From positions 248,001-312,000 of IMG/VR virus record IMGVR_UViG_3300025162_000016: a stretch of 64,000 nt of DNA; one strand, given 5' to 3'. Under the pieces are notes generated by a model. That model was not told the origin of the DNA. It saw nothing but the letters and a program-made list of their open reading frames with translations, and ran no database searches. Of this stretch, positions 27,291 to 59,832 are shown piece by piece; position 1 is the stretch's first letter, and every line of letters starts with the position of its first letter. A program made the translations under genes and the position numbers.

Positions 27291-27647
27291 ATGCAATCTG
27301 AAAAAGGTGATAGCTATTGGACTCTTAAAAGTGAAATACTTACTCTAGAAGATTTTGAACTTCCGGATGGCAGATATATTGGTGCTACTATTGAGTTTAG
27401 TGGCATTTGGGAAGATGACGCATTTGATTATGAATATGGTAGTATCTGTGGCACTCATCGTGAAGATCCCTATTTTACCATAGAGAAGTGGTGGGTGACA
27501 GGTGTTTGGGATATGGCAACAAAAACCGCTATTCCAATGGATGATGTCATTCAAATCGCAATAGATAAAGAAATGGATATTATTGCCAATTCAGTTGCGA
27601 CTGAAGTCGAATTTCCCGAGCCGGATTGTCAACAACCCCTACCCTAA
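27291..27647 (+). CDS. Hypothetical acidic protein; 3' end interrupted by an IS right end
   Basis: Last codons run into the TnpB1 right-end hairpin. Confidence 0.55.
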   Translation: MQSEKGDSYWTLKSEILTLEDFELPDGRYIGATIEFSGIWEDDAFDYEYGSICGTHREDPYFTIEKWWVTGVWDMATKTAIPMDDVIQIAIDKEMDIIANSVATEVEFPEPDCQQPLP

Positions 27648-30162: not shown

Positions 30163-31497
30163 GTCAACAACCCCTAGGCTAAAGCCATGGGGGCTTGAAA
30201 GACACCGAGCTTTCTCAGTGATTTATATTCATTCGGCGAATTGACTGTCGCCTGCCCATAAGTCAAACGGTTAGTTTGTGATATGGGATGTTTGGATAAT
30301 TTAGCAATGTTAATCGCTGCATTTATATCCGCATCGTATATCATTCCATTAACTTTAGAGTAAAATCTACAACCTCTTCTCTCACCTTCAACCTTGCCTG
30401 TTACGGAATCGGTTTTAGATGTGTTGTAAGGGCAAACGAGCAGAACAGTTTTACCTTGATTCTGTGCCTTATAGGTTATTACTCTACGAAGTTCAAATAA
30501 TGGAACTTGTGATATACTTCTTTTGTTTTGGTATTTATTTTTCTTTACTTTTATGGATTTGAGATTTTCTAAGCAAATTATGTCTGCTTCGGTATTGAGA
30601 ACGGAATTAGCAATTAGATGGGTCTGGTTTTTGTTTTGATTATGTTCTTTTCGTCTTAAAGAATATCTTAATTTTCTGCGGGCAGATTTTGTCCCCTTAG
30701 ATTTGAGGATGTCTTTTTGGTGTCTTAATCTTCGTTTACGTTCATTGAATTTTTTATCTATAATTAATTTTCCTTCGCTTGTTGCGGCAGACCTACGAAT
30801 ACCTAGATCGACTCCAATTGCCAATCTGGGTTTCAATTGAGGTTGTTTATTTTCAAATGACAAACAAATATAGATGTTTCCCATGTCCTCATAAATCAGA
30901 GGGTCTTGATAGGAATATTTATTAAGTAATTCTTTAAGTCGTGGATAAACCGTGAATTCAAATGTTTGTCTTTTATTTGCGGTTGTTATACGAATTGAAG
31001 ATTTATTTGGTATTGAATAAAGTCTTTTATCCAACCGCATTGATAATTTCTTTTTTTCAATCGGAGATTTTATTTTATGTTTATTTGATTTAACGGAACG
31101 ATACGACGAAATACATTCATTTAGAGAACGAATGATTACTTGTGATGTTATTTCGGGGTATTGTTTTCTAATATTATGATATACTTTGGAGTGTAATATT
31201 TTTGGAACAATTTTAGATTCGGAAAACTGTTCTTTAGAAGCAAAATTAAATACAAGTTTTTGATGTTCAAGCAACTTTTTAAGTTCGCTTGTATCACCGA
31301 TTAGTTTTGTATTATAAGTAATCATTTGTTACAACAATATATATCACACGATAAACGAAAACATCAAAAAAAGTTAAAATATGTGATTTATTTTATGGTT
31401 GACAAACTGAGGTGGTTGGTGTAGGATATTAAGAATGGTCGGAATTCCTCCTCTACCCTAAAGGGATAGAGGCTTCCTTCCTCCAAGAAAGTGAACA
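30163..31497 (-). mobile_element. IS200/IS605-family tnpB-only element (TnpB2)
   Basis: Right end ending TTGAC at 30163; left-end hairpin ~31447-31480. Confidence 0.8.
30174..31325 (-). CDS. tnpB: RNA-guided endonuclease TnpB
   Basis: GVDLG, ICLENL, DADINAA; no Zn finger; paralog of TnpB1. Confidence 0.92.
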   Translation of the reverse strand: MITYNTKLIGDTSELKKLLEHQKLVFNFASKEQFSESKIVPKILHSKVYHNIRKQYPEITSQVIIRSLNECISSYRSVKSNKHKIKSPIEKKKLSMRLDKRLYSIPNKSSIRITTANKRQTFEFTVYPRLKELLNKYSYQDPLIYEDMGNIYICLSFENKQPQLKPRLAIGVDLGIRRSAATSEGKLIIDKKFNERKRRLRHQKDILKSKGTKSARRKLRYSLRRKEHNQNKNQTHLIANSVLNTEADIICLENLKSIKVKKNKYQNKRSISQVPLFELRRVITYKAQNQGKTVLLVCPYNTSKTDSVTGKVEGERRGCRFYSKVNGMIYDADINAAINIAKLSKHPISQTNRLTYGQATVNSPNEYKSLRKLGVFQAPMALA

Positions 31498-31554: not shown

Positions 31555-31854
31555 ATGAAATCAAAAACACTTCATCCTTACAAACCAAATTATTGCTCGC
31601 ATCCCGGTGAAACCCTTCTCGAAACTATAAACCAATATGGGCTTACCATATCTGAGTTTTCCAAACTGGTGGATGTTCCCCCGCTGAAAATTACTAACAT
31701 AGTTAATTGGCAAGCTCCGATCACCTTGACAATTGCCGAGAAGTTGGAAAACACCCTCCATATCTCATCCGATTTTTGGATGGCGATGCAAGAGAATTAT
31801 GATCGGTTTCAAAGGAATAGGTTGACAAAGACTATGCAATCTGATAGCATATAG
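31555..31854 (+). CDS. higA: HigA-like antitoxin / XRE HTH protein (orphan)
   Basis: HPGETLLE, HTH, IT..IAEKLE..L..S.DFWMAMQ.NYD. Confidence 0.8.
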   Translation: MKSKTLHPYKPNYCSHPGETLLETINQYGLTISEFSKLVDVPPLKITNIVNWQAPITLTIAEKLENTLHISSDFWMAMQENYDRFQRNRLTKTMQSDSI

Positions 31855-31856: not shown

Positions 31857-31892
31857 AGTAAAATGCCGGAACAGACCAGCCACTACATCACC
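31857..31892 (+). repeat. Solitary degenerate CRISPR repeat in the 5' UTR of ORF 31903
   Basis: 29/36 identity to the array repeat; begins ~6 nt after TTGACA-17-TAGCAT. Confidence 0.8.
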
Positions 31893-31902
31893 AACATATC
31901 AC

Positions 31903-32241
31903 ATGACTGATCAAGAAATAAACGTTGCAATTGCAACTGTGTGTGGAGAAGAATATCATGAACCTACCGGAGAAGAAATTAAATCTGGTAGTTATTATCA
32001 ATATCAGCCAAACTACACCGGCGACTTAAATGCGATTCATTCTGCATGGTCGCAATTATCCATCGCAAAACAGGTTCTGGCCTGTAGCGAGCTTGAACGC
32101 CTGTGCTATGGCCCTTGCGATACAAAATTGAGGGTCGTCAATGCAAGTGCTCGTCTGAAATCGGAAGCCTTTTTGCGGGCAGAAGGAAAATGGAAGACTA
32201 GTTCAAAAATGACACCCGCTCAGAAAGCTAGCCGAAAGTAA
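31903..32241 (+). CDS. Hypothetical phage protein
   Basis: MTDQEINVAIA...PNYTGDLNA motif common in phage proteins. Confidence 0.65.
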   Translation: MTDQEINVAIATVCGEEYHEPTGEEIKSGSYYQYQPNYTGDLNAIHSAWSQLSIAKQVLACSELERLCYGPCDTKLRVVNASARLKSEAFLRAEGKWKTSSKMTPAQKASRK

Positions 32242-32275: not shown

Positions 32276-32515
32276 GTGGAAATCGCCTGGGTGTCACCAT
32301 TTTTTAAAATTATGAAATTAAATGACCTACCACCATTAGATCAAGCAGAAATCATTGCAAACAGAATTGCCAATATGGATGCTCTACGGGAACACGCCTT
32401 GAAGAGTCGCAATCCAATTGAGTTGATGACGATTGAATTGGATGCACAGGCCAGACTTATGGGACTCAATATGGATTATTGTGAGGAATTAGATGATGAT
32501 GAATATGATCAATAA
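32276..32515 (+). CDS. Hypothetical protein
   Basis: Operonic ORF. Confidence 0.5.
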   Translation: MEIAWVSPFFKIMKLNDLPPLDQAEIIANRIANMDALREHALKSRNPIELMTIELDAQARLMGLNMDYCEELDDDEYDQ

Positions 32516-32517
32516 TA

Positions 32518-32724
32518 ATGACTAAATCACAACTACAAAAACACTTGGGGACCAAGCTAACATTTGAATTAGAAACATTCAGGATGTTATTTACGGACCT
32601 AGATGATAACCAACGTTTGGAATTAATCAAATCCCTTATTTGGACTTCGATTGACGCTCACGCTATGCATAAACGAGTTGTTAACGCAATTTTAAATCCT
32701 TCTTTTGAGAAAACACTTGATTAA
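32518..32724 (+). CDS. Hypothetical protein
   Basis: 5' end duplicated at ~33907-33955. Confidence 0.55.
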   Translation: MTKSQLQKHLGTKLTFELETFRMLFTDLDDNQRLELIKSLIWTSIDAHAMHKRVVNAILNPSFEKTLD

Positions 32725-33011: not shown

Positions 33012-33431
33012 ATGACAAAATATAAAAAAATAATATGGGGTTTTGAACCTACTGATGATGTAACTTGTCTGGAACTTCCACAGAGGATTGCTTTTACTTT
33101 CGGTTATAATTGGGAAACGTCTACCATATATTCGAGAATGATTCCAATGGTTATAACTGATAAGAATTTTCGAGTTGGATTTGATCCCAACAGAAAATTA
33201 ATGAATCTGGTTAAGGATTATAAATCCTCGGAATATTTGGTAGTATGGACAGGTGAATTTTTGATTAAAATGTTAAATAATCCTCCGTTGAATCCAATAG
33301 TAATCGAATCTACTGACGGTAAACTATCGGTTCACATTGAATCGGATAATGTGGTTTTTGTGGATAGCGATAAGTCGATTCAAGTTAGTGTTCCAAAGAA
33401 ATTAGTACGGCAGACGGCGGGATTGTGTTAG
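33012..33431 (+). CDS. Hypothetical protein, paralog of ORF 34129
   Basis: Shares KI.W.F.P...QRIAF.FGY.W. Confidence 0.6.
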   Translation: MTKYKKIIWGFEPTDDVTCLELPQRIAFTFGYNWETSTIYSRMIPMVITDKNFRVGFDPNRKLMNLVKDYKSSEYLVVWTGEFLIKMLNNPPLNPIVIESTDGKLSVHIESDNVVFVDSDKSIQVSVPKKLVRQTAGLC

Positions 33432-33469
33432 TGTTCCAAAGAAATTAGTATGGCAGACGGCGGGATTGT
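33384..33469 (+). repeat. 43-bp tandem duplication at the gene end
   Basis: Two copies differing by one base. Confidence 0.9.
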
Positions 33470-33545
33470 TATTAAAATAGAATAAAGACTCCATCGAACG
33501 AAAGATGGGGCTTCTTTTTGTATATAGTTGGATATTTATATCTAT

Positions 33546-33887
33546 ATGATTAAACTTAAAGATATAATATTAGAATTTTTTGATAGATATTGGACATTGG
33601 AAATGGCTAAACCAATAGCCGATAAACTTGGGGCAAAAATAGTTGGTTCTGTTGCTAAATATGGAAAATCAAATCATGATTTAGATCTTAGAGTCGAACA
33701 TAATGACATTTTATCTATAACAAAAATTTTAAATATTTTGGGTTTTGAATCATATGGAAGTGAAGTAGTTTCACCAGAAGAAGCAAAAAAATCCAAAAAT
33801 ATATATGGAAAAGGTTGGCAAAGAGCATATAATTTTATAAATAAAGATGATAAAATAATTCAAATTTGGATGGATCAAAATGATTAA
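33546..33887 (+). CDS. Minimal nucleotidyltransferase-like protein with MIKLKDI N-terminus
   Basis: IVGSVAKYGKSNHDLDL matches hGS-x9-DhD. Confidence 0.6.
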   Translation: MIKLKDIILEFFDRYWTLEMAKPIADKLGAKIVGSVAKYGKSNHDLDLRVEHNDILSITKILNILGFESYGSEVVSPEEAKKSKNIYGKGWQRAYNFINKDDKIIQIWMDQND

Positions 33888-33955
33888 ATTAAAAGATATA
33901 ATAGATATGACCAAATTACAACTACGAAAACACTTGGGGACCAAGCTAACATTTG

Positions 33956-34074
33956 ACAATGTGGAACTTGCGAAATATGGCGTTTGATGTTGACAAATCA
34001 GGGATAATAGAATACATTACCGCTCGCAAATTGATACACGGTTTTTTGATAATACGATAGTTACAATGGATACA
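33956..34074 (+). promoter_or_regulatory. Second copy of the CRISPR leader with promoter
   Basis: Homologous to the reverse complement of ~50345-50463; TTGACA-17-TACATT, CCGCTCGCAAATTGATACAC. Confidence 0.9.
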
Positions 34075-34110
34075 GGTGAAGTGCTGGAACAGATCAGATA
34101 CTATATCACC
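34075..34110 (+). CRISPR. Solitary CRISPR repeat after the duplicated leader
   Basis: 34/36 identity to consensus. Confidence 0.9.
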
Positions 34111-34128
34111 ACCACCCAGAATAAAAAT

Positions 34129-34680
34129 ATGAAAAATATGAAAAATATGAAAAACTACAGGAAAATAGTATGGTCATTCAATCCTTCGATTGACAGCGAA
34201 GTCATTCAGAGGATTGCATTTAGTTTCGGATACGATTGGGAGGACAATGACAGTTATGATGCTCTGACTAAGATAATTTTTTCTGAGGAGAGGATGATGT
34301 TTGATCCTAACACAAAGAAAATCTCGGCGGTTCATTGTAAATATGATTGCACACACACACGTTGGACGTCTAGTCTGCCCCATTTCATGGAATCCCTCAA
34401 AGACCCTCCTGAAATTATTCCAACTGTCTCTTCACCGGCACCGGATACAAAATCGAATCTAAACTTTCCGGTGGTCAGCTTTATGTATCACGACAAGATT
34501 CGTCGGGTTCGGGTTACTAAAATGTATGATAACCACCTGGAAGGGTTTGAAACCTCCTGTGGCGGGAAACCCTACCTAATAGAATCCTACAAGAAATATC
34601 GGATTGATGAGATGGAATCCGATGTTGTCTTGATAAGTTTCGTGCAAGATATTCCCAAAACTATAGATTACGAACCATGA
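34129..34680 (+). CDS. Hypothetical protein between two CRISPR repeats; possible C-terminal WYL-like domain
   Basis: FMYHDKIRRVRV...YKKYRID pattern. Confidence 0.55.
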   Translation: MKNMKNMKNYRKIVWSFNPSIDSEVIQRIAFSFGYDWEDNDSYDALTKIIFSEERMMFDPNTKKISAVHCKYDCTHTRWTSSLPHFMESLKDPPEIIPTVSSPAPDTKSNLNFPVVSFMYHDKIRRVRVTKMYDNHLEGFETSCGGKPYLIESYKKYRIDEMESDVVLISFVQDIPKTIDYEP

Positions 34681-34811
34681 CTAAAGATGAGTTGCAAGAA
34701 ATCCTAATGCAGTGCTGGCATAGGGAAACATCGGTGGATGACGCATTGGACGCCATCTGTGGAGAAACGATGGTCGAGGAAACGCTGTGACTGAATGCAG
34801 ACGAATTGCGT

Positions 34812-34847
34812 GGTGAAGTGCTGGAACAGACCAGCTACTATATCACC
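34812..34847 (+). CRISPR. Solitary CRISPR repeat
   Basis: 35/36 identity to consensus. Confidence 0.9.
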
Positions 34848-34965
34848 TTGTATGGTATGAATGATTGCTGGAACCCGGTTGACCTAGCGGCTGAATATGA
34901 TGCTCTCATAGTTCAACCGGAAAACGATTGACAAATTAATATAATTCTGATAGTCTTTACCCACA

Positions 34966-35298
34966 ATGAAAAACGAACAATTGAAGTGGTTTCCATATTA
35001 CCAGAATAACAGCGGGGGCACGCTCCTAATTGACAACGAGGTTGCCGAGACAGTATATGTCCAAGCTCATTCCGCCAATGAGGCGAATAAAATTGCTGAA
35101 TCACATGGTATCTATTTCGACGGTTGCACCGAGGGAACAGATTGTTCCTGCTGTGGAGATCGTTGGAGTCGAACTATTGACCGATGCGGAACGGATGTTC
35201 CCTGCCACTATGGGAAGCCGATTTCGTCGTGGGACGTGCCTGACAACGGAGTTGATAAGACTCGCCGTTATCGACGGTTTCATCGGTTCGGTCTGTGA
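34966..35298 (+). CDS. Conserved phage hypothetical protein
   Basis: Y.QNNSGG...GIYFDG...DC.CCGDRW motif. Confidence 0.7.
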   Translation: MKNEQLKWFPYYQNNSGGTLLIDNEVAETVYVQAHSANEANKIAESHGIYFDGCTEGTDCSCCGDRWSRTIDRCGTDVPCHYGKPISSWDVPDNGVDKTRRYRRFHRFGL

Positions 35299-35343
35299 AT
35301 CGGGCTTGACTTATTATAATAATTCTGATAGTCTTTACCCAAG

Positions 35344-35637
35344 ATGAAAAACACACAAAGCAATGACGTGATGACTAAAGACGAGATGCAAAAACTCCTA
35401 ATGCAGTGCTGGCATAGGGAAATATCGGTGGAAGAAGCTATGGCATCATTTATCTGGGTAGAACCGCTGGTCGAGGAAACGCTGGGAACGAATGTCGAGG
35501 TTAATGATGAGTGTCTTGAGGCTTTGCAGCCGGTAGATAAAAAAACAGATGATTTTTATTACACTGGAATCCCTGACATAGATATGCGGCGGGTGATTCA
35601 AATGGAAGCCAATAGAATATATTCAGATCGAAGTTGA
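35344..35637 (+). CDS. Hypothetical protein
   Basis: Cassette promoter; truncated paralog at ~34677-34790. Confidence 0.6.
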   Translation: MKNTQSNDVMTKDEMQKLLMQCWHREISVEEAMASFIWVEPLVEETLGTNVEVNDECLEALQPVDKKTDDFYYTGIPDIDMRRVIQMEANRIYSDRS

Positions 35638-35671
35638 CATTGTATAATAATTCTGATAGTCTTTACCCAAG

Positions 35672-35872
35672 ATGAGCACAGACTATATAAACAGATCAGA
35701 ATTTGACGGATTAACGGATTGGCAGAAGCGGTTGTTGATGCGTTGGGGCCGGCGATATGGAGCAGGTTATCCTCCCGGCAGGCCGTTGGCCTTGGCTTCC
35801 ATGAAATTCAACAAGCGATATAGTTATGATCGAATTGACCAGAGGTTTATAAACTGGCTTTACACTTACTAA
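35672..35872 (+). CDS. Hypothetical protein
   Basis: Cassette promoter. Confidence 0.6.
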   Translation: MSTDYINRSEFDGLTDWQKRLLMRWGRRYGAGYPPGRPLALASMKFNKRYSYDRIDQRFINWLYTY

Positions 35873-35927
35873 AATAATTCAGATCGAAGTTGACATTTTA
35901 GAATAACTCTGATAGTCTTTACCCGAG

Positions 35928-36155
35928 ATGAAAAACGAAGAACTTGTATTATTGCTTAAGGCTGCATTTGCGGCGGGGTTCCGTTACGGGCACGACGCCG
36001 GGGCGGATGCAGAATGGGGCCATGGATGTTCAATAAGTAACAAGCCACAAACGCCGGATAAGGCGTGGTCGGAGGATGTCCAATGGAGGATCGACACCGA
36101 TAGTAGTTATCACCTGGATGTTGAAAACCGAGAGCATTGGAACAACGTTCCATAG
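35928..36155 (+). CDS. Hypothetical protein
   Basis: Cassette promoter. Confidence 0.6.
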   Translation: MKNEELVLLLKAAFAAGFRYGHDAGADAEWGHGCSISNKPQTPDKAWSEDVQWRIDTDSSYHLDVENREHWNNVP

Positions 36156-36203
36156 ATAGCAGACAATGGTTGACTTATTATAGAACCGTGGATTATTATT
36201 TAT

Positions 36204-36509
36204 ATGAAAACATTTTTATCATACGAAGAAATCCAAATTGGCACTTGGTGGGAAATTGCCCAAGGTGGCGAATATGGTTATTGCGTTATTGGAAAAAATG
36301 ATCAAACTATATCCAAGATGAATAACGAAACATTTGAAACTTTCGATTGTGGAGACAAAGTAGATGTTCGCTGGCGACATGATTCTGATTTCAATGATGA
36401 CTTTACCGGGCGAGTTGTGGAGTTTAGAGGTAAGTATATCATCGTTGAAGATCAAGCCGGTGACTGTTGGAGTTGTGATCCCGGGCAGATTAGTTTGAAT
36501 ACGGATTAG
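36204..36509 (+). CDS. Hypothetical protein
   Basis: TTGACT promoter near 36171. Confidence 0.55.
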   Translation: MKTFLSYEEIQIGTWWEIAQGGEYGYCVIGKNDQTISKMNNETFETFDCGDKVDVRWRHDSDFNDDFTGRVVEFRGKYIIVEDQAGDCWSCDPGQISLNTD

Positions 36510-36581
36510 TGATTGGTAAACAATAAATAAATTCAGATCGAAGTTGACATTTTAGAATAACTCTGATACTCTTTACCCAAG

Positions 36582-36821
36582 ATGAAAAACGAAAACGAAA
36601 ACGAAATAACGAACGAAAACTTAATCCTAAATTGTCTTCTCCGTGAGCCGATGCGGGTGCATACGACGCTTGCTAAAAAGTGGCTACACCAGAATCAAAC
36701 AATCATCATGGGCGGCGTGGTTCGTTATTTGGCTATCCGCCCCCTGGGATTAGGTATCTTCGAAATAAAAGTCGCACCCGTTACCGTTCGATCAACCGAA
36801 ATGACAAACAATGAAGATTAA
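36582..36821 (+). CDS. Hypothetical protein
   Basis: Cassette promoter. Confidence 0.6.
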   Translation: MKNENENEITNENLILNCLLREPMRVHTTLAKKWLHQNQTIIMGGVVRYLAIRPLGLGIFEIKVAPVTVRSTEMTNNED

Positions 36822-38394: not shown

Positions 38395-38466
38395 GGCCCG
38401 TTCGTTTATCAGCTAGGACATAGGATTTTCAATCCTAAAAAGAGAGGGCGGCACTCTCACGGGCTA
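38395..38466 (+). tRNA. tRNA-Glu(UUC) with atypical T-loop
   Basis: Acceptor GGCCCGT/ACGGGCT, loop TTTTCAA, T-loop GGCGGCA, no encoded CCA. Confidence 0.7.
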
Positions 38467-38933: not shown

Positions 38934-39108
38934 TGATCCGCAGTCATAAATTCACTTTCTTGGAGCAAGGAAGCCCCTATCCCTTTAGGGTAGGGGGGGA
39001 GGAATTGTGACCAATCTAAAATAATTGAAAATAATTTAATGTTTCGTAAATCTTCCCCATAAACAAAATTTGTTGTGTTTTTGAAATAACCACACATATG
39101 TATTACAT

Positions 39109-49168: not shown

Positions 49169-49369
49169 ATGACTATTTCAATTAAAACCGCATCTCGTAA
49201 AGATATTCAGCAGTTCCAACGATGGGTTAAGTTACAACCTTGGTCTGAAATATCTTTTCTCCACGAAACTTACCTCCGAGATGATTGCCGTGAAGAAAAA
49301 TTGAAAATTCTCTTCGCCAAATTCTCCGCTCTACCACTAAATCAACGGTTTCCAGCGGGTGATAGGTGA
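49169..49369 (+). CDS. Small hypothetical protein converging on the array trailer
   Basis: TTGACT-17-TACATA promoter; stop codon lies inside the terminal repeat. Confidence 0.45.
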   Translation: MTISIKTASRKDIQQFQRWVKLQPWSEISFLHETYLRDDCREEKLKILFAKFSALPLNQRFPAGDR

Positions 49370-50344
49370 TATAGTGACTGGTCTGTTCCAGCACTTCACC
49401 GGCGAAGCACCTGCTCGGCAAGGACCGCTACCACGAGGTGGTGATATAGTAACTGGTCTGTTCCAGCACTTCACCATTACCGATGTTTCTTTATAGCATA
49501 TACATATAACGGCGGTGATATAGTAACTGGTCTGTTCCAGCACTTCACCTAGGCGACTGAGTTAGGGGCTTTTCCTATATAGCGGTGGTGATATAGTAAC
49601 TGGTCTGTTCCAGCACTTCACCTGAATATGCATTGCCTCTGGTGCAACAATTCGGATAGGTGATATAGTAACTGGTCTGTTCCAGCACTTCACCCAGATA
49701 GAAGATGATAAACCGGATTCTCTACTGATGGTGATATAGTAACTGGTCTGTTCCAGCACTTCACCTTGAAAGGATACCATAGGAAGGATATGTATTACTC
49801 ATGGTGATATAGTAACTGGTCTGTTCCAGCACTTCACCTAGAGTTTGCTTTTGATGAAAGCCAATATGCTGCGGGTGATATAGTAACTGGTCTGTTCCAG
49901 CACTTCACCTCTTTTTTTATTGCTCTATGAGCAGAGACTTGGCTCTGGTGATATAGTAACTGGTCTGTTCCAGCACTTCACCTCTTTTTTTATTGCTCTA
50001 TGAGCAGAGACTTGGCTCTGGTGATATAGTAACTGGTCTGTTCCAGCACTTCACCGTAGAGTTCAGCACTTGGAATATCCATTACTATGATAGGTGATAT
50101 AGTAACTGGTCTGTTCCAGCACTTCACCCATATTTTCCAGTTGGTTCGGGCAAATCAATCGTGGGTGATATAGTAACTGGTCTGTTCCAGCACTTCACCT
50201 TCTTTACTCCATTCCCAGAAGGCTAATGCGAGCGGTGGTGATATAGTAACTGGTCTGTTCCAGCACTTCACCAAATGCAAGTTATCACTATATTTCGCCA
50301 ACTCGAACGGTGATATAGTAACTGGTCTGTTCCAGCACTTCACC
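49365..50344 (-). CRISPR. CRISPR array: 14 repeats (36 nt, GGTGAAGTGCTGGAACAGACCAGTTACTATATCACC as transcribed), 13 spacers of 35-39 nt
   Basis: Read directly; variant trailer repeat at 49365; spacers 49910-49946 and 49983-50019 identical. Confidence 0.99.
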
Positions 50345-50465
50345 TGTATCCCTCGTAAGTAACGTATTATCAAAGAACTGTGTATCAATTTGCGAGCGGC
50401 AGTGTATTCTATTATCCCCGGTTTGTCAACATCAAATATCATATTTCGTAAGTTCCATATTATCA
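50345..50465 (-). promoter_or_regulatory. CRISPR leader with sigma70 promoter
   Basis: Minus-strand TTGACA-17-TACACT; CCGCTCGCAA motif recurs at ~50390, ~50480 and inverted at ~50514. Confidence 0.85.
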
Positions 50466-50523
50466 GCGAGTTACAAGTTGCGAGCGGCTACGGCATATTT
50501 GACGCCACCTAACCGCTCGCAAA

Positions 50524-52800
50524 TTAACATAAAAGTCCCAGCTCAATATCATAATTAATATGATAGTTATTCAATGCCCACATTGTAATTGGGTCATCGG
50601 CATCGTCCCGAATTTTCTCTAGCGGTTCAATAATTCCGGCATTAAGTAATCGTTGGTGTACATTTCCAAATACCGTTACCGAATTTCTGCTAATATCCGC
50701 ATATCCGAGGGTAATATCTTTAGATTTAATTCTTTCAATGACAGTCGGATCGATTACAACTGTAAATTTTTGAGTTTTTATCAATCGCATTAAATTACCT
50801 ACGGTGCGGAGATTTCCCTTGGAAAAGTTATCTTCAATCCGAGAAATCATATTCCAATTGCTAGTTGTTAACGTGTCTCTCGCTGCCGATGTTCCCATTG
50901 CCGGAATCCATTCATTTTTTTCTAATTTACGAAATACATTAATCGCTCTTTGTGTCGTAGGATTAATAGTTATTGTTCCCTTTCGGATTAATGATTCAGA
51001 AAAACAAAAAACATATACTTTTCCGATTTTAAATTCATTATTCCTATTACATCTTCCGGTGCATTGTTGAAGTGAATCTAAACTGGTTTCTTCTCGATAA
51101 CACCGCTCAAATGATATATCAATACCACATTCTACCATTGAGGTGGCAATTAATATGACCGGTAATTCATCTTTTATTTTTTGTTTTATTAATTCCAATC
51201 TTTTTTCTCTAAACTCCGGTGTCACTCGACTACTCAAATGATAGACATTCCCATTTCCGCTATTCAATAATTTAAATAAAACCTTCGCATTATTAGTGGT
51301 ATTACATACTATTAAAGTAGAATGTTTGTTTTTATATCCATTAGTTATATGCCGACATAATTTACCTAATCCAATAGCTCCCAGATGCGATTTTTTAACC
51401 CGTGTATTTTCTCTCGCCTGAAAATGCTTCCATTCCGTATGTGTAAGCATATTATCCACTACTATATTTTTATGATATAAATCCCAAAAATCAATGGGAG
51501 TCCCGGAACTAAAAATAACGTGAACATTATAATTGTTTACTAATTTTTCTAATAAAAATAACGCATGTGACCATAATTCATATGGCATCGCTTGATGATA
51601 CTCATCAAGAACAATGACCGAATCCGTAAAATGAATGAGTTTCCCTATCGCTGCGGGATGATAAGTAGTCAATGCCTCGAAAAATTGCACGCAAGTAGTA
51701 TACGTTAATGGACCATCTAATCTATTATTATATTTTCGCAACCGCCAATCTGTAAACTGAACCATAGAATGATGCTCGTTAATAACCCCTACCTGATACT
51801 CTCCCGGTAACAAAAGAGATTCTTTTGCTTTACCAACAAGTTGATTGATAACATTAATATATGGGGCCACAATAAATATTCGTTCACACCCATATTTTTT
51901 TGCCATTTTCAATGCCTTTTTATGATTAGCATTGGTTTTACCCGAACCTACCGTACCATCGTTTTTTATCCAAGATGAGATAGATTCCCTATCCGCCGAC
52001 GCATAAAGAAGCTTCCGATCTTTAATTCTTTTACCGGGATTTATTTTACTTAATCCATCATTATATTTATCAAAATTTTCAATACGCTCATCCTCTCGAA
52101 GTTTATATGGCTCAGGTAGCACATATCCATCATTACGAAATTGATTGGTGTCGGCGTGATCAGCAGACACCATGCAGGAAAAACACTCTGATATATCATG
52201 CCAATCAACATTTTTAATATTAATGTTATACCCAACATCCGGCATTGAATCCGTAATAATTATATCTTCTTTATGTAGTTGTTCCCATATAATAAGATTA
52301 GCATCTACATAATCTCTTATACGATAATCCCGCCATTTTTCTTTAAGATGTATTTTGGTCGGCGATAACATTTGTGACGGATTAACAAGAGTAATTTTAG
52401 TTAATTCTTCCCAATCTATATAACCAATATGATGAGCCAATATCAGCCACGCTGCTAAAAGATAATATAATTCATTGGTTCGTTCATATTCCTTAATACA
52501 ATGCGATACTCCTGCATCAACATGGTTAAGCATTGACGTATCGCTTTCGCTTGATTGTGAAAGAATTGCTTGACATTCCGGCATCAATTTTCCCAAATCA
52601 TGCCATTCTGTAGCAGTTTCAAGTATTTTCCGATAGAAATTTACCATTTTTCTATTCTTATAATGACGAAATCTACGATCAAACTCCCGCAAGGCGTTAT
52701 TACGTACCGCATGAATGTGATCCCGATATAATTGCGGAGCAACTGTACGGTTCGATGCGTTCACCTGATAACCGGAATGGGCAAAATTTTCTGTCAGCAT
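50524..52800 (-). CDS. cas3: Cas3 helicase-nuclease (HD + SF2)
   Basis: DH, WHDLGK, NH..AG, AHH, SADH; GSGKT, APYINVINQ, DEYH, SGT, NT, ATSMVECGID, QCTGRCNR. Confidence 0.93.
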   Translation of the reverse strand: MLTENFAHSGYQVNASNRTVAPQLYRDHIHAVRNNALREFDRRFRHYKNRKMVNFYRKILETATEWHDLGKLMPECQAILSQSSESDTSMLNHVDAGVSHCIKEYERTNELYYLLAAWLILAHHIGYIDWEELTKITLVNPSQMLSPTKIHLKEKWRDYRIRDYVDANLIIWEQLHKEDIIITDSMPDVGYNINIKNVDWHDISECFSCMVSADHADTNQFRNDGYVLPEPYKLREDERIENFDKYNDGLSKINPGKRIKDRKLLYASADRESISSWIKNDGTVGSGKTNANHKKALKMAKKYGCERIFIVAPYINVINQLVGKAKESLLLPGEYQVGVINEHHSMVQFTDWRLRKYNNRLDGPLTYTTCVQFFEALTTYHPAAIGKLIHFTDSVIVLDEYHQAMPYELWSHALFLLEKLVNNYNVHVIFSSGTPIDFWDLYHKNIVVDNMLTHTEWKHFQARENTRVKKSHLGAIGLGKLCRHITNGYKNKHSTLIVCNTTNNAKVLFKLLNSGNGNVYHLSSRVTPEFREKRLELIKQKIKDELPVILIATSMVECGIDISFERCYREETSLDSLQQCTGRCNRNNEFKIGKVYVFCFSESLIRKGTITINPTTQRAINVFRKLEKNEWIPAMGTSAARDTLTTSNWNMISRIEDNFSKGNLRTVGNLMRLIKTQKFTVVIDPTVIERIKSKDITLGYADISRNSVTVFGNVHQRLLNAGIIEPLEKIRDDADDPITMWALNNYHINYDIELGLLC

Positions 52801-52916: not shown

Positions 52917-55900
52917 ATGACAAAAGAAAAAATCAAAAAAACCAAAAAGGCAAAAGTAGAAAAAGACTCCGTAACACGGGCGGGTATTTTGCGGATATTG
53001 TTGAATCCAGATCAACATCAAGAACTCGATACTCTCATCTCTGACCACCAAGAGGCTGCTAGAGAAATTCAGACTGCGACATATAAATTATCTGGACTAA
53101 AGCTATATGACAAAACCAACAACATGGTGGTCGATGGTAGCAAAGCAACCCCCGAAGAACAAGAGGCTTATTATAAAATAATTAATTGGGAAGGTCAGCC
53201 AATTTCAATTTCCAATCCAATGGTGCGGGCTACATTTAAAAGTATAGCGAAAGTCAAAGAAGATATTCGTCGAAAACAGGAAGAGTATGCTAAGCTTGAA
53301 GAAGCGGATTTGACAAAAATGTCAACCGGTGATGTAAAAAAACATAAAAATGAACTTAGAAAAGCAGCAAACAGAATTAAACATTCTGAAGAGATTCTTC
53401 AGTTTGCCAAATGGCGACTTGCCGACATTTTTCCGCTCCCTCTATCGCACAACTCTCAGTTACATCTTAAAAATAACTATCACCAAAATGTATTCAGTGG
53501 ATTCCATGCACGAGTTAAAGGATGGAACGCATGTGATATTGCGGCTCAAGCAAATTATGCTGAGATAGATAACCGATTAACGGAGTTGTCTTCGGAATTA
53601 TCCGGTGATTATGGGAGCGAAGTTATAACCGATTTGATGGGCTTGTTACAATACACTAAAGAACTAGGAGAAGGATACACGGATACTTCTTATTTGAATT
53701 ATAAATTTTTATCGTTTTTTAAGGAATGCTGGCGACCCAATGCAATTGCTAATAACACCGGATTGCTAGAAGGATTTTGGCTGGCAAATAATAAACACAC
53801 CAATAAAAAAAATCAAGTTGCTTATTCTTTCAATCCAAAAATTAGTGAAGAATTGTTCCGACGAAGAAGTTTATGGGAATCTGATAAATGCCTTTTGTCT
53901 GATCCAAGATTTGAAAAATATGTTGAATTATTTGATAAACATGGTCGTTATCGTAAAGGAGCTTCCCTTACTTTAATTTCAAAAGAATCTCCCATTCCAA
54001 TCGGTTTCTCAATGGATCGCAATGCGGCTAAATTAGTCCGTATAGATAATGATACCGCCAATCGTCAATTAACCATTACTATCGAACTTCCCAATAAAGA
54101 AGAACGTTCTTATGTAGCTGCGTATGGACGTAAACATGAAACTAAATGTTATTATAATGGGCTTACAACAAGATTACCTCGTAGTGAGAAGGAGTTGCTT
54201 GCATTAGCCAAAGCAGAAAATCGTGAACTCACGGACAAAGAAATACATGAGGCATCACTTGAAAAGTGTTATATTTTTGAATATGCCCGAGCCGGTAAAA
54301 TACCGGTGTTTGCTGTCGTAAAAACATTATATTTTCGACGCAACCCGTCTAATGGTGAATATTATGTTATTCTTCCAACTAATATTTTTGTTGAATATCA
54401 CGCCAATAATGAATTCAATTCCAAGGAATTATTCAAAATTAGATCGGAGCTCCAAAAGGCATGGGATGAAGTTCGCACGCCTAAACGTAATGTTCAAAGC
54501 TGTGTTTTGGATAAAGACCTAAGTAAACGTTTTGCCGGTAGAACTTTGAAATATGCGGGAATAGACCTTGGATATAGTAATCCATATACGGTTAGTTATT
54601 ATAACGTGGTGGGAACAGAAGAAGGTATTCAAATCAAAGAAACGGGAAATGAAATTGTTTCTACGGTTTTTAATGAACAGTATATTCAACTCAAAGGGAA
54701 TATATACCAACTTATAAATATCATTCGTGCCTCCCGTCGATACTTACAAGAGAGCGGTGAATTAAAGCTAAGTAAAGATGATATTAAAAGTTTTGATCAA
54801 CTCATGGAGTTACTCCCATCCGAACAACGAATTACTATCGATCAATTCATTAAAGATATTAAAAAAGCAAAACAAGAGGGAAAGTTAATACGAGACATTA
54901 AAGGAAAACTCCCGGTTGAAGGGAAAAAGAAAGAATATTGGGTTATCAGTAATTTAATGTATGTTATTACTCAAACAATGAATGGTATTCGGGGAAATAG
55001 AGATTCTAATAATCATCTCACCGAGAAGAAAAATTGGTTGTCGGCTCCCCCATTAATTGAATTGATTGATGCTTATTATAATCTTAAAAAAACATTCAAT
55101 GATTCCGGTGATGGAATTAAAATGCTTCCTAAAGATCATGTATATGCCGAAGGAGAAAAACAACGGTGTACTCTAAGAGAAGAAAACTTCTGTAAAGGTA
55201 TTTTAGAGTGGCGGGATAATGTTAAAGATTATTTCATTAAAAAATTATTCTCCCAAATCGCTCACCGCTGTTACGAATTAGGAATCGGTATCGTAGCAAT
55301 GGAGAATCTTGATATAATGGGATCATCTAAAAATACTAAACAAAGTAATCGTATGTTTAATATCTGGCCCAGAGGACAAATGAAAAAATCTGCCGAAGAT
55401 GCGTTTAGTTATATGGGTATATTAATCCAATATGTCGATGAAAATGGAACCAGTCGCCATGATGCCGATTCCGGTATTTATGGTTGTCGTGATGGTGCAA
55501 ATCTATGGCTACCTAATAAAAAATTGCACGCCGATGTAAACGCCTCTCGAATGATCGCTCTACGAGGACTTACTCATCATACTAATCTGTATTGTAGAAG
55601 TTTAACCGAAATAGAAAATGGAAAGTACGTTAATACATATGAATTGTTCGATACCACAAAAAATGACCAAAGTGGAGCGGCAAAACGACTCCGTGGAGCA
55701 GAAACTCTTCTACATGGTTATTCCGCTACCGTATACCAAATCCATACCACAAACACCGGTGCCGGTGTTGCCTTACTACCTGACTTAACTGCAACCGATG
55801 TCATTAAAAATAAAAAAATCACCGCCACAAAAGAAAATACAGCCAAATATTATAAATTAGATAATACTAATACCTACTACCCATGGAGTGTATGTGAAAA

Positions 55901-55928
55901 ACTTCACAAAAATTGGAAACTATCATAA
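52917..55928 (+). CDS. cas12: Class 2 type V effector (Cas12h/Cas12b-like), 1003 aa
   Basis: RuvC-I GIDLG, RuvC-II VAMENL, GTS..D..SG..G.R, RuvC-III HADVNA..IALRGL.H; adjacent array. Confidence 0.88.
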   Translation: MTKEKIKKTKKAKVEKDSVTRAGILRILLNPDQHQELDTLISDHQEAAREIQTATYKLSGLKLYDKTNNMVVDGSKATPEEQEAYYKIINWEGQPISISNPMVRATFKSIAKVKEDIRRKQEEYAKLEEADLTKMSTGDVKKHKNELRKAANRIKHSEEILQFAKWRLADIFPLPLSHNSQLHLKNNYHQNVFSGFHARVKGWNACDIAAQANYAEIDNRLTELSSELSGDYGSEVITDLMGLLQYTKELGEGYTDTSYLNYKFLSFFKECWRPNAIANNTGLLEGFWLANNKHTNKKNQVAYSFNPKISEELFRRRSLWESDKCLLSDPRFEKYVELFDKHGRYRKGASLTLISKESPIPIGFSMDRNAAKLVRIDNDTANRQLTITIELPNKEERSYVAAYGRKHETKCYYNGLTTRLPRSEKELLALAKAENRELTDKEIHEASLEKCYIFEYARAGKIPVFAVVKTLYFRRNPSNGEYYVILPTNIFVEYHANNEFNSKELFKIRSELQKAWDEVRTPKRNVQSCVLDKDLSKRFAGRTLKYAGIDLGYSNPYTVSYYNVVGTEEGIQIKETGNEIVSTVFNEQYIQLKGNIYQLINIIRASRRYLQESGELKLSKDDIKSFDQLMELLPSEQRITIDQFIKDIKKAKQEGKLIRDIKGKLPVEGKKKEYWVISNLMYVITQTMNGIRGNRDSNNHLTEKKNWLSAPPLIELIDAYYNLKKTFNDSGDGIKMLPKDHVYAEGEKQRCTLREENFCKGILEWRDNVKDYFIKKLFSQIAHRCYELGIGIVAMENLDIMGSSKNTKQSNRMFNIWPRGQMKKSAEDAFSYMGILIQYVDENGTSRHDADSGIYGCRDGANLWLPNKKLHADVNASRMIALRGLTHHTNLYCRSLTEIENGKYVNTYELFDTTKNDQSGAAKRLRGAETLLHGYSATVYQIHTTNTGAGVALLPDLTATDVIKNKKITATKENTAKYYKLDNTNTYYPWSVCEKLHKNWKLS

Positions 55929-55929: not shown

Positions 55930-56390
55930 CGCCAAATGTTGTAACATATCAGTTATTATATCACCGGCGAACTGTGAACTCTCGCAGAAACAAAAGAAAT
56001 GCTTTCTGCTTGACTTTTTCAAAAATATCGGTATCATACCAATATGAATGAATCATTGGTATGTGGACGGTTAACCGCCCATAAAAAACCTTGTCAAAAT
56101 TAACCCGTTTTTTATATTATATATATATAAAAACATATCTACGTATTCTTAAAGGTGAAGTGCTGGAACAGACCAGTTACTATATCACCGATATAATATC
56201 GGTAACATACCAATATGAATACAAAAACAGATATGAAACAATATGATACCGAAACCCTGTCCCCTCTCATCTATATAGTAAAAAAAATATCCTTACCTAC
56301 ATAAAGATATATCTACATATTCAAAATATAAAAACATATCTACGTATTCTTAAAGGTGAAGTGCTGGAACATATCAGTTACTATACCACC
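55930..56390 (+). CRISPR. Three widely spaced repeat copies after cas12 (55930-55965 degenerate, 56154-56189 perfect, 56355-56390 3 mismatches)
   Basis: Direct comparison with consensus. Confidence 0.8.
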
Positions 56391-57240: not shown

Positions 57241-57250
57241 TGTAAGGAAT

Positions 57251-57436: not shown

Positions 57437-57532
57437 AACAATCTGGTTGACAAAAACAAATAAATCGGTATAGTTTGAAGTGTAATAGATAAACACGGTA
57501 AACAAAAAGCAGAATCGAAAGAAACAAAAATT

Positions 57533-59747: not shown

Positions 59748-59832
59748 TGGTTTACAATAAAGACGGCGAGAAAAGTAAAATATTCTTTCCGTCTTTTCTT
59801 GACTTTTTATATTATATTCATACACTATACCC

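What the first reader, a model, noticed from the sequence alone, without database searches (positions are those of the whole stretch)
33880..34847. Duplicated CRISPR leader followed by repeat - whole gene - repeat
Seen: ~120 bp at 33956-34074 is homologous to the array leader, including its promoter and CCGCTCGCAAATTGATACAC motif. It is followed by a near-perfect repeat, 701 bp holding a 183-aa ORF and a truncated paralog of ORF 35344, then a second near-perfect repeat. Upstream is a chimeric 35-codon remnant (MIKLKDII fused to the start of ORF 32518), which marks a recombination junction. Inference: this is either an array with a gene-sized spacer (capture or shuffling of genes between repeats), or a gene placed under CRISPR-leader control whose mRNA Cas12 could excise at both ends.
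Basis: partly seen in the sequence, partly recalled or inferred. Interest (0 to 1): 0.8.

Follow-up and report, generated by a model that had tools for sequence, protein, structure and literature searches.

The report
Phage gene flanked by CRISPR repeats
In a 369-kb phage that carries its own Cas12 CRISPR system, an ordinary phage gene sits behind a copied CRISPR promoter and between two intact CRISPR repeats; recombination built this arrangement rather than spacer capture, and it may couple the gene's expression to the CRISPR machinery, though that is untested.

Summary
A truncated CRISPR leader copy (33954-34074) is followed by repeat R1 (34075-34110), 701 nt, and repeat R2 (34812-34847). 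The 701 nt hold an intact gene (B', 34147-34680) and a pseudogene fragment (D', 34677-34790). The arrangement appears in dozens of independent assemblies. It is inherited as one block (33896-34959) in two strain backgrounds whose flanks differ.

It is not an acquired spacer. Real spacers here are 34-41 nt (one of 50). B' has orthologs in related phages that have no repeat within 4-15 kb. The unit has at least five recombination junctions in about 1 kb. No cas1/2/4 was found. The region is a cassette-shuffling zone where repeated promoter cassettes are the junctions.

One correction: the array-adjacent gene is Cas3. The Cas12 candidate is a rare 1003-aa protein transcribed divergently from it.

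Most likely, B' is now transcribed from a CRISPR-leader promoter inside a pre-crRNA-like transcript. Whether Cas12 cuts at R1 and R2 is inferred only. The phage also has at least 4 arrays, 5 leader copies and over 15 solitary repeats.

Verdict: a new variant of viral mini-array or solitary-repeat biology, of moderate interest.

The parts
33874..33903 (+). Duplicate of the start region of gene C (33546-33887), forming the first 8 codons (MIKLKDII) of the chimeric ORF. Present only in the window strain.
   Evidence: 87% identical over 30 nt to 33540-33569. Absent from strain type L058, which has a 63-aa ORF here instead.
33880..33987 (+). Chimeric 35-codon ORF: C-start, then the A' fragment, then read-through into the leader. 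A recombination scar, not a gene.
33898..33956 (+). A' fragment: copy of the first ~16 codons of gene A (32518-32724). The left boundary of the inherited block is at about 33896.
   Evidence: 89.8% identical to 32512-32567. The block boundary comes from the window versus L058 comparison.
33954..34074 (+). Truncated CRISPR leader copy: the promoter-proximal 121 nt of a ~200-nt leader family. It lacks the distal GCGAGCGG-N25-CCGCTCGC palindrome.
   Evidence: 86-88% identical to four canonical leaders, which are 91-97.5% identical to each other. It has 11 private substitutions, none in the -35 hexamer or the motif.
33990..34018 (+). Leader promoter, TTGACA-17-TACATT.
   Evidence: 10/12 match to consensus. 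The hexamers align with the canonical leaders.
34020..34039 (+). Leader motif CCGCTCGCAAATTGATACAC, at or just after the predicted transcription start.
   Evidence: Exact copy. The only other copy in the window is in the array leader at 50380-50399.
34075..34110 (+). Repeat R1. It has 2 substitutions in the inner stem (C20T keeps a G-U pair; T24A opens the closing pair). Predicted hairpin -10 kcal/mol, against -13 for the consensus.
   Evidence: Identical in strain type L058.
34111..34146 (+). A-rich 5' UTR (the pseudo-spacer position). It contains a 9-nt tandem repeat AAAAATATG (3.6 units; 2.6 in the other strain) that adds in-frame ATG codons.
   Evidence: No target-like match elsewhere beyond generic gene starts.
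34147..34680 (+). Gene B' (177 aa from the ancestral start; 183 aa from ATG 34129). An intact protein of unknown function. Old paralog of gene B (33012-33431). The C-terminus is extended by 9 residues past the ancestral stop.
   Evidence: 30% aa identity to B. Orthologs at 59-67% identity. dN/dS 0.3-0.6. 54 family representatives, no Pfam domain. Model pLDDT 88 with no significant fold match.
34677..34790 (+). D': truncated pseudogene copy (codons 10-47) of gene D (35344-35637), with a premature TGA. Its start overlaps the B' stop (ATGA).
   Evidence: 63% aa and 81% nt identity to the window's own D, but 90% nt identity to the D gene of relative L019.
34812..34847 (+). Repeat R2. It has 1 substitution (T24C, which turns a G-U into a G-C pair; -15 kcal/mol). 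It is a perfect consensus copy in strain type L058. It has no promoter of its own.
34848..34927 (+). Tail after R2. Probably the 3' remnant of another small gene (ends ...VQPEND-stop, resembling the end of ORF 61611-61814).
   Evidence: resemblance seen by eye; weak.
34928..34980 (+). Promoter-plus-start cassette of the next gene. The right boundary of the inherited block lies inside it, at about 34959.
   Evidence: Cassette family D1-D3. Strain junction at 34959-34960. A chimeric cassette occurs in L019.
31857..31892 (+). Second promoter-repeat-gene case. A degenerate repeat (7 mismatches, no longer folds) starts at the predicted +1 of promoter 31822-31850, 10 nt before gene 31903-32241.
   Evidence: Homology to relatives stops at the promoter. 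The first 15 nt after the repeat match a relative's cas12 promoter.
49365..50344 (-). Main CRISPR array: 14 repeats and 13 spacers of 35-39 nt, with spacers 5 and 6 identical.
50345..50540 (-). Canonical leader (~200 nt). It reaches into the last codons of cas3.
50524..52800 (-). cas3 (HD nuclease plus helicase), 758 aa.
   Evidence: Pfam Cas3-like_C_2 at 2.5e-15, TIGR01587 at 1e-29, PADLOC Cas3c at 1.2e-88, PDB Cas3 at 6.5e-27.
52917..55928 (+). Divergent type V effector (Cas12-like), 1003 aa, with intact RuvC-type motifs.
   Evidence: TnpB-related C-terminus. Profile hit to Cas12j19/Cas12X at 7.6e-11 over residues 760-906. D550, E796 and D873 are invariant in 4 homologs. The gene pair with cas3 is conserved in relatives.

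Best explanation
The segment 33896-34959 is a recombinant gene cassette. It lies in the hyperplastic small-gene region of a ~369-kb phage that carries its own type V (Cas12 plus Cas3) CRISPR system.

Short-homology or illegitimate recombination joined these pieces:
- the promoter-proximal 121 nt of a CRISPR leader with its first repeat (R1);
- a resident phage gene (B');
- a fragment of another gene (D'), taken from a diverged allele;
- a second repeat (R2).

This is the same process that shuffles promoter cassettes between strains here. It is not a Cas1-Cas2-acquired spacer.

The likely consequence is that B' is transcribed from the leader promoter inside a pre-crRNA-like RNA. That RNA would consist of about 50 nt of leader RNA, the R1 hairpin, a 36-nt A-rich UTR, B', D' and the R2 hairpin, and it would run on into the next cassette. 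B' would therefore be co-expressed with the phage's crRNAs.

If the phage Cas12 processes these repeats as it must process array repeats, it would release the B' message with repeat-derived ends.

What is shown: the anatomy, the recombinational origin, inheritance as one block, and the integrity of the promoter, the repeats and B'.
What is inferred: promoter activity, processing at R1 and R2, and any regulatory benefit.
For: Origin by recombination:
- Junctions lie at 33896, 33954, about 34126, about 34653, about 34798 and 34848.
- D' is nearer to a relative's allele (90%) than to the resident D (81%).
- B' orthologs in L019-L022 sit behind an ordinary gene end or promoter cassette, with no repeat within 4-15 kb.
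- Promoter cassettes are the strain junctions.
- Arrays hold duplicated spacers, so repeat-mediated recombination operates.
- A second 'upstream sequence plus repeat' module is duplicated, with homology ending at the repeat's 3' end.

Not a spacer:
- 701 nt against 34-41 nt.
- No cas1/2/4 in the window or in relatives' cas contigs.

Potential function retained:
- The -35 hexamer, -10 hexamer and leader motif are conserved despite 11 private substitutions.
- No plus-strand terminator from 34000 to 35000.
- R1 and R2 fold into the hairpin supported by 8 of 13 covarying pairs.
- B' is intact in all lineages, dN/dS 0.3-0.6.
- The whole unit is 98.2% conserved between two strain types whose flanks differ on both sides, and R2 is 0-1 mismatch from consensus.
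Against: - There are no expression or RNA-end data.
- The two strains are so close (98%) that retention of the block does not demonstrate selection.
- The flagged leader is the most diverged of the five copies and has lost its distal 75 nt. R1 carries two stem substitutions that weaken its hairpin. This is what relaxed constraint would look like.
- A similar promoter-repeat-gene site at 31857 has decayed.
- Upstream genes could also transcribe B' by read-through.
- The processing site and processing enzyme for this Cas12 family are unknown.
Confidence: 0.6

Rival explanations
1. Neutral scar. The unit is a decaying orphan mini-array produced by accidental recombination. The leader copy and repeats no longer do anything for B', which is expressed like its neighbours by read-through or fortuitous promoters.
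For: - The flagged leader is the most diverged copy (86-88% against 91-97.5%) and is truncated.
- R1 has two stem mutations and a weaker fold.
- The 31857 copy shows that such repeats decay.
- D' is a dead fragment.
- The region is demonstrably a recombination patchwork.
- Strain divergence is too small for conservation to imply selection.
Against: - All recognisable promoter elements and the 20-nt leader motif are untouched. The single -10 change moves the hexamer toward consensus.
- R2 is perfect or improved.
- 36-nt direct repeats flanking 701 nt should be lost readily by recombination, yet the unit persists in two strain backgrounds and dozens of samples.
Confidence: 0.27
2. The repeats act as Cas12-binding RNA elements in their own right. 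They would be regulatory or decoy crRNA-like RNAs, comparable to crlRNA/CreR-type regulators or RNA anti-CRISPRs. They merely happen to flank B', or they use the B' start region as a guide.
For: - The phage has more than 15 solitary or paired repeats. Several start at or near the +1 of strong promoters.
- A relative (L016) has a degenerate mini-array at its cas12 start whose spacer resembles a stretch inside cas12.
- The pseudo-spacer of the 31857 copy matches 15/15, from its first nucleotide, the cas12 promoter -10 region of lineage L014/L015. No shuffle out of 5000 matched both criteria.
Against: - The R1 and R2 pseudo-spacers have no target-like match in the phage or its relatives, only generic A-rich gene starts.
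- R2 has no promoter of its own.
- No cellular genome among 185,579 species carries this repeat, so there is no host system to mimic.
- The phage encodes the cognate Cas12 itself.
Confidence: 0.08
3. Repeat-flanked mobile cassette. R1 and R2 serve as 36-nt recombination sites that let B' be excised, lost or moved into any of the phage's arrays, in an integron-like manner.
For: - Duplicated spacers show that recombination occurs between repeats.
- The unit is bounded by direct repeats identical to more than 40 copies elsewhere in the genome.
Against: - No array in the sequence I hold contains a gene.
- No deletion or relocated variant was seen in any contig.
- The inherited block's boundaries are not at the repeats. 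They lie at a gene start (33896) and inside a promoter cassette (34959).
Confidence: 0.04
4. Genuine spacer acquisition of a gene-sized prespacer, or an assembly artefact.
For: Only the formal repeat-X-repeat layout behind a leader.
Against: - The length is 17-20 times that of real spacers.
- No adaptation genes were found.
- The content is a resident gene plus a pseudogene fragment with internal junctions.
- The sequence is identical in many independent assemblies and present in a second strain.
Confidence: 0.01

Closest known systems
Virus-borne mini-CRISPR arrays and solitary repeat units (SRUs). See the descriptions and citations in the preprint 10.1101/2023.03.03.530964 and in PMC11656645.
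   Same: These are one or two CRISPR repeats outside a regular array in a viral genome. This phage has many of them, some with their own promoters.
   Different: - Known mini-arrays have spacers of 20-60 bp that target rival viruses or regulate genes. Here the inter-repeat segment is 701 nt and encodes a conserved protein.
- The unit has a leader copy.
- The phage encodes the cognate effector itself.
crRNA-like regulatory RNAs (CreTA/CreR, tracr-L, crlRNAs; 10.1101/2023.03.03.530964, 10.1101/2024.10.29.618823)
   Same: Both are repeat-derived elements outside arrays that tie Cas proteins to gene regulation. The neighbouring 31857 copy and the L016 mini-array look like this kind.
   Different: Those work through a short guide with partial complementarity to a promoter. 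No such target exists for the R1 or R2 pseudo-spacers. Any regulation here would act in cis on the mRNA that carries the repeats.
RNA anti-CRISPRs (Racrs; PMC10651486)
   Same: Both are solitary repeats encoded by phages and transcribed as small RNAs.
   Different: Racrs mimic the repeats of a host system to poison it. Here the repeat belongs to the phage's own Cas12 system, and no cellular genome with this repeat was found.
Mobile regulatory cassettes (PeSLs) that mediate modular shuffling in T4-type phages (PMC2839356, PMC4122927)
   Same: In both, repeated promoter-containing cassettes between small early genes mark the endpoints of insertions, deletions and replacements between close relatives. 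This is what is seen at 34928-34959 and in L019. The leader-plus-R1 module behaves like one more such cassette.
   Different: The cassettes here are promoter-plus-start-codon units with no evident stem-loop terminator part. One of the shuffled modules is a CRISPR leader with its repeat.
Engineered Cas12a single-transcript units, and direct repeats placed in mRNAs to control their stability (PMC6576101, PMC9943656)
   Same: In both, a protein-coding message and Cas12 direct repeats share one transcript, so that Cas12's own RNase activity would cut the mRNA at the repeats.
   Different: Those are synthetic and use Cas12a. Here the arrangement is natural, the effector is an uncharacterised Cas12 only distantly related to Cas12j19/Cas12X, and processing is unproven.
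CRISPR arrays interrupted by insertion sequences (general knowledge; example here in L014)
   Same: In both, a leader and first repeat are followed by a gene rather than a spacer. L014 has a leader and a single repeat followed by a resolvase/TnpB-fragment element.
   Different: B' and D' are not a mobile element. There is no transposase and there are no element ends. B' is a resident gene with orthologs at equivalent places in relatives.

Membership tests
Functional CRISPR array | Two or more direct repeats of the system's own repeat sequence, preceded by a leader | tested here: met
   R1 and R2 differ from the consensus at 2 and 1 positions. A truncated leader copy with a promoter precedes them.
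Functional CRISPR array | Spacers of uniform, system-typical length | tested here: not met
   701 nt, against 34-41 nt for 35 of 36 spacers in four arrays, with one of 50 nt.
Functional CRISPR array | Spacer derived from foreign DNA by an adaptation module | tested here: not met
   The content is a resident gene with orthologs in relatives, plus a pseudogene fragment. No cas1/2/4 was found among the ORFs scanned in the window or in relatives' cas contigs. The remaining ~305 kb of the genome was not scanned.
Viral mini-array / solitary repeat unit | One or two repeats outside a regular array in a virus genome | tested here: met
Viral mini-array / solitary repeat unit | Spacer of about 20-60 bp that matches a rival virus or a regulated promoter | tested here: not met
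   The length is 701 nt. The first 36 nt after R1 and after R2 have no specific match in the phage, its relatives or GenBank phages.
crRNA-like regulatory RNA (CreTA/CreR type) | Guide with partial, seed-anchored complementarity to the promoter of a cas or toxin gene | tested here: not met
   None for R1 or R2. A candidate of this kind exists at the separate 31857 copy, aimed at a relative's cas12 promoter.
RNA anti-CRISPR (Racr) | The repeat mimics that of a host CRISPR-Cas system which the element must evade | tested here: not met
   All hits among 185,579 species' genomes are chance 20-mers, with 23-30 mismatches over the full 36 nt. The host itself is unknown, so absence from the collection is not proof.
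PeSL-like mobile regulatory cassette shuffling | Repeated promoter cassettes at the endpoints of indels and replacements between close relatives | tested here: met
   The junction between strain types lies inside cassette 34928-34980. L019 has a chimeric cassette joining 36524-36593-like and 34928-34980-like halves. The cassette family has 8 copies.
PeSL-like mobile regulatory cassette shuffling | The cassette includes a stem-loop terminator upstream of the promoter | tested here: inconclusive
   No terminator-like hairpins were reported at the cassettes by the simple scan. This was not examined further.
Type V (Cas12) CRISPR-Cas system, as the presumed processor of the repeats | Single large effector with a C-terminal RuvC/TnpB-like nuclease domain, next to an array | tested here: met
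   TIGR01766/TnpB C-terminal hits. Profile hit to Cas12j19/Cas12X at 7.6e-11. GIDLG, ENL and HADxNA motifs are invariant. The gene lies 2.6 kb from the array.
Type V (Cas12) CRISPR-Cas system, as the presumed processor of the repeats | The effector itself processes pre-crRNA at the repeat | not testable with these tools
   No RNA data and no biochemistry are available. The repeat forms a full-length hairpin supported by covariation, which would be the substrate.

The most novel reading that the evidence does not exclude
The unit is a natural 'single-transcript unit'. The phage's Cas12 would bind and cut the R1 and R2 hairpins and so excise a protein-coding mRNA from a leader-driven pre-crRNA-like transcript. 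Because the Cas12-held guide position coincides with the translation-start region of B', the level of B' protein would depend on Cas12 availability. CRISPR repeats would then be acting in cis as mRNA-processing or translational-control elements.
Probability: 0.2. Interest if true: 0.85.

Novelty: new variant of a known kind. Interest (0 to 1): 0.55.

Why it matters
If the repeats are processed, this would be the first natural case I know of in which a Cas12 system's leader and repeats are wired to express and trim a protein-coding message. Engineers have built that design with Cas12a, but it has not been described in nature. It would add cis-acting mRNA control to the known non-immune uses of CRISPR parts.

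Even if the unit is neutral, it documents how CRISPR leaders and repeats spread and decay inside a huge phage genome. They move by the same cassette recombination that shuffles early genes.

The locus also points to a wider and possibly more important feature of this phage group. A rare Cas12 is always paired with Cas3, and it is surrounded by a swarm of promoter-driven solitary repeats. At least one of these may target a rival lineage's cas12 promoter.

Tried and rejected
- Assembly artefact: rejected. The sequence is identical in two IMG/VR contigs, in 24 or more other contigs and in L024, and the unit is present in strain type L058-L062.
- Guide-target reading of the sequences after R1 and R2: only generic A-rich gene-start hits.
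- The 56154 pseudo-spacer 'target' at 56024-56049: judged a duplicated promoter/ATG cassette, because the match starts at position 6, not at the repeat junction.
- My early conclusion from L023 that the junction downstream of B' is strain-specific: withdrawn. L023 is 100% identical to L058 until its last 104 nt, and L058-L062 carry D'-R2. A scan for the L023 tail in viral contigs found nothing.
- Link between solitary repeats and TnpB element ends: rejected. The shared 130-nt module starts about 320 nt beyond the TnpB stop, past the point where TnpB copies stop being similar.
- Systematic 'repeat then gene start' pattern: only 2 of 17 non-array copies precede an ORF of 100 aa or more.
- Function of B': no result from Pfam, PHROGs or the ESM Atlas. 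Foldseek against PDB and BFVD gave no significant match, only a weak SH3/Sm-like resemblance of the C-terminal barrel at E about 0.15.
- Spacer targets: none in GenBank phages or in the held relatives.
- Rfam: no family for the repeat or its surroundings.
- Metagenome and genome scans with the repeat core: only the same phage, the L015 lineage and chance 20-mers.
- Literature on a Cas12-Cas3 module or on Cas12X/Cas12j19: nothing found.
Full report
**What is there.** The window is part of a 368,758-bp IMG/VR phage contig (IMGVR_UViG_3300025162_000016, about positions 248,001-312,000). An 84-kb contig from another sample is 100% identical across the flagged site. The 36-nt repeat occurs 18 times in the window with 3 or fewer mismatches, against 0 expected. 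Fourteen copies form an array on the minus strand at 49365-50344. The rest are scattered.

At the flagged site:
- Positions 33954-34110 are 88.5% identical to the leader plus first repeat of that array (E 6e-54).
- The same stretch is 88-89% identical to three more leaders elsewhere in the same phage.
- R1 (34075-34110) and R2 (34812-34847) are 701 nt apart.
- Between them lie an intact ORF (B') and a 37-codon fragment (D') of the gene at 35344.

**Corrections to the description.** The gene beside the array is Cas3: HD nuclease plus helicase, PADLOC Cas3c 1.2e-88, PDB Cas3 6.5e-27. The likely effector is the divergently transcribed 1003-aa protein.
- It has a TnpB/RuvC-like C-terminus.
- A profile of it and its three homologs hits Cas12j19/Cas12X at 7.6e-11, over residues 760-906 only.
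- The GIDLG, ENL and HADxNA motifs (D550, E796, D873) are invariant. That these are the catalytic residues is my inference from TnpB/Cas12 knowledge.
- Only four homolog clusters exist among 5.8 billion proteins. In every relative the gene is paired with cas3.

The leader is a five-member family. The four canonical copies share about 200 nt and are 91-97.5% identical to each other. The flagged copy keeps only the proximal 121 nt, is 86-88% identical to the others, and has 11 private substitutions. None of these touches the -35 hexamer or the 20-nt motif, and the one in the -10 moves it toward consensus.

**The repeat RNA.** The whole 36-nt repeat folds into one rod-like hairpin. Across 18 natural variants from three lineages, 90% of cells pair and 8 of 13 pairs show compensatory changes. 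No shuffle out of 500 reaches these values, and slid controls fall to 20-46% paired.
- R1 is weakened (-10 kcal/mol against -13 for the consensus).
- R2 is slightly strengthened (-15).
- A third, degenerate copy at 31857 no longer folds (-3.5).

**Comparison with relatives.** B' is a real gene. It has orthologs at 59-67% identity, dN/dS of 0.3-0.6, and 54 family representatives.

In the more distant relatives L019-L022 the ortholog starts at the codon equivalent to ATG 34147. It is preceded by an ordinary gene end or promoter cassette, and there is no CRISPR repeat (10 or fewer mismatches) anywhere in 4-15 kb. Placing a leader and repeat in front of B' is therefore a derived state.

D' is 90% identical to the D gene of L019 but only 81% to the resident D, so it came from another allele.

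A second, widespread strain type (L058-L062, dozens of contigs) carries the entire unit. L058 6187-7238 matches window 33896-34959 at 98.2%. It has the same R1, the same D' stop and a perfect R2. Both flanks differ:
- On the left, a 63-aa ORF replaces gene C.
- On the right, the junction lies inside the promoter cassette at about 34959. The window's 110-aa gene and full-length D are absent there.

The unit is thus inherited as one block.

An apparently R2-less variant (L023) is identical to L058 up to the last 104 nt of a 2.6-kb contig. I do not rely on it.

**Why it is not an acquired spacer.**
- Real spacers are 34-41 nt, with one of 50.
- The 701 nt are resident phage DNA with internal junctions.
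- No cas1, cas2 or cas4 domain occurs among 45 ORFs scanned in the window or in relatives' cas contigs.
- The region is a cassette-shuffling zone. Eight copies of a promoter-plus-ATG cassette lie between small genes, and these cassettes are the junctions between strains and relatives. This resembles the mobile regulatory cassettes of T4-type phages (PMC2839356, PMC4122927).
- Duplicated spacers inside arrays show recombination between repeats.
- A second 'upstream sequence plus repeat' module is duplicated at 98.5% identity, with homology ending at the repeat's 3' end.

**How it most likely works.** The leader promoter (TTGACA-17-TACATT, 33990-34018) is intact. No plus-strand terminator lies between it and beyond R2. 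The R1 hairpin is predicted to form on its own in the 5' UTR, while the A-rich start region stays open.

B' should therefore be made from a transcript that looks like a pre-crRNA, and be co-expressed with crRNAs. If Cas12 processes these repeats, the B' message would be cut out with repeat-derived ends. Cas12 bound at R1 would sit over the region occupied by a guide in a normal crRNA, which here is the translation start of B'. Engineered Cas12a systems show this design is workable (PMC6576101, PMC9943656). Everything from promoter activity onward is inference.

**The main rival** is that the unit is a neutral, slowly decaying scar. Supporting that view: the leader copy is the most diverged and is truncated, R1 is weakened, the 31857 copy has decayed, and 98% strain identity is too close for conservation to prove selection.

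**What B' is** remains unknown.
- No Pfam or informative PHROG hit.
- Nothing above chance in the ESM Atlas.
- A confident model (pLDDT 88) has no significant structural neighbour. Only its C-terminal barrel weakly resembles SH3/Sm-like folds.

**Context: solitary repeats.** The held parts of the phage contain 17 non-array repeat copies. Several begin at or near the +1 of strong promoters. They fall into two subtypes whose terminal base pair covaries.

Only two of them (31857 and R1) directly precede a sizeable gene. No cellular genome in the species collection carries the repeat, so mimicry of a host system has no support.

One side lead stands out. The 15 nt immediately after the degenerate 31857 repeat match exactly the -10 region of the cas12 promoter of lineage L014/L015.
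- A match starting at position 1 occurs in 0.6% of shuffles.
- A match in a cas3-cas12 intergenic region occurs in 0.1% of shuffles.
- Both together occur in 0 of 5000.
- This phage's own cas12 promoter matches only loosely. The second strain type has a mismatch at position 2.

This looks like the crRNA-like regulators described elsewhere (10.1101/2023.03.03.530964, 10.1101/2024.10.29.618823), possibly aimed at a rival phage.

**Verdict.** The finding is real and reproducible. It is best described as a leader-repeat-gene-repeat cassette built by recombination. It is a new variant within viral mini-array and solitary-repeat biology. The Cas12-processing reading is plausible but unproven, at about 0.2.

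Noticed in passing
window 50524-52800 (-) and 52917-55928 (+); L014 5302-10694; L015 295-5687; L016 2515-8188: A Cas3 gene and a rare 1003-aa Cas12-like gene with intact RuvC motifs form a divergent pair. The pair is conserved in all four relatives found. No cas1/2/4 lies beside them. I found no paper describing a Cas12-Cas3 module.
   Followed up: partly
window 31857-31907; L015 2652-2666; L014 7659-7673: The 15 nt directly after the degenerate repeat at 31857 match exactly the -10 region of the cas12 promoter of lineage L014/L015. No shuffle out of 5000 gave a position-1 match in a cas intergenic region. This may be a crRNA-like RNA aimed at a rival lineage's cas12. The phage's own cas12 promoter matches only loosely, and strain L058 has a mismatch at position 2.
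   Followed up: partly
window 55930-63770 and L004 14042: Thirteen solitary or paired repeat copies lie downstream of cas12 (twelve in the window, one at L004 14042). Many carry the AGTGA...TCACT end variant. Several start at or near the +1 of strong promoters: 59138-59165 before 59172, 61819-61846 before 61895, and 56091-56120 before 56154.
   Followed up: partly
L016 5028-5137 and 5400-5436: In a relative, a degenerate two-repeat mini-array sits at the start of cas12. Its 37-nt spacer is 81% identical to a stretch inside cas12, which suggests an autoregulatory crRNA-like RNA.
   Followed up: no
L014 4399-5116 versus L015 1-109: Two contigs encode the identical Cas12. One has leader-repeat-spacer-repeat. 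The other has a leader and a single repeat followed by a resolvase and a TnpB fragment (IS607-like). This is an independent case of a leader and repeat followed by a gene.
   Followed up: partly
window 34927-36596, also 31516, 38724 and 40856: There are eight copies of a 54-70-nt cassette: TTGACA-N17-TAGTCT-like, then about 9 nt, then ATG. Transcripts from it would be nearly leaderless. These cassettes are the recombination junctions between strains and relatives.
   Followed up: partly
window 49910-50019; L010 2152-2265 and 2668-2781: Spacers are duplicated within arrays: spacers 5 and 6 of the window array, and spacers 1-2 and 8-9 of L010 array 2. The arrays therefore change by recombination rather than only by acquisition.
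   Followed up: yes
L033 1600-1729 and L050 8273-8402: A 130-nt module (94 nt plus a perfect repeat) is duplicated at two places in the phage at 98.5% identity, with unrelated sequence after the repeat. It contains a 9-nt stretch complementary to the repeat's 5' part (TTCCAGCAC).
   Followed up: partly
window 50460-50540 (-), L010 and L001 leaders: All four canonical leaders include the last codons of cas3 and a GCGAGCGG-N25-CCGCTCGC palindrome. The extra arrays therefore arose by duplication of the cas3-proximal array with its leader.
   Followed up: partly
window 27644-28819 (-), 30174-31325 (-), 47791-48987 (-); inverted repeats 31446-31495 / 38951-39000: The window holds three TnpB (IS200/605-type) genes. 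One lies directly downstream of the CRISPR array. One copy is 96% identical to a relative's (L021). 50-nt inverted repeats sit near the element ends.
   Followed up: no
window 56757-56997: Five tandem 49-nt units carry a TATTTCACCAATTT box. The box recurs at L004 beyond 14077 and near 56572. They look like iterons and may mark a replication origin.
   Followed up: no
window 34123-34154 and 33384-33469: Two tandem repeats vary in copy number between strains. The 9-nt AAAAATATG unit (3.6 units against 2.6) adds in-frame MKN codons to B'. A 43-bp duplication at the end of gene B is absent from L023 and L058.
   Followed up: yes
window 38395-38466: Rfam finds a fifth tRNA next to the cluster of four. 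ARAGORN did not report it.
   Followed up: no
window 1-25000 and 42494-43183: The window encodes a typical huge-phage auxiliary set: NAD synthase, NAPRTase, DHFR, ThyX, dCMP deaminase, DNA and RNA ligases, a PARP-like domain, ADP-ribosylglycohydrolase and DnaJ.
   Followed up: no
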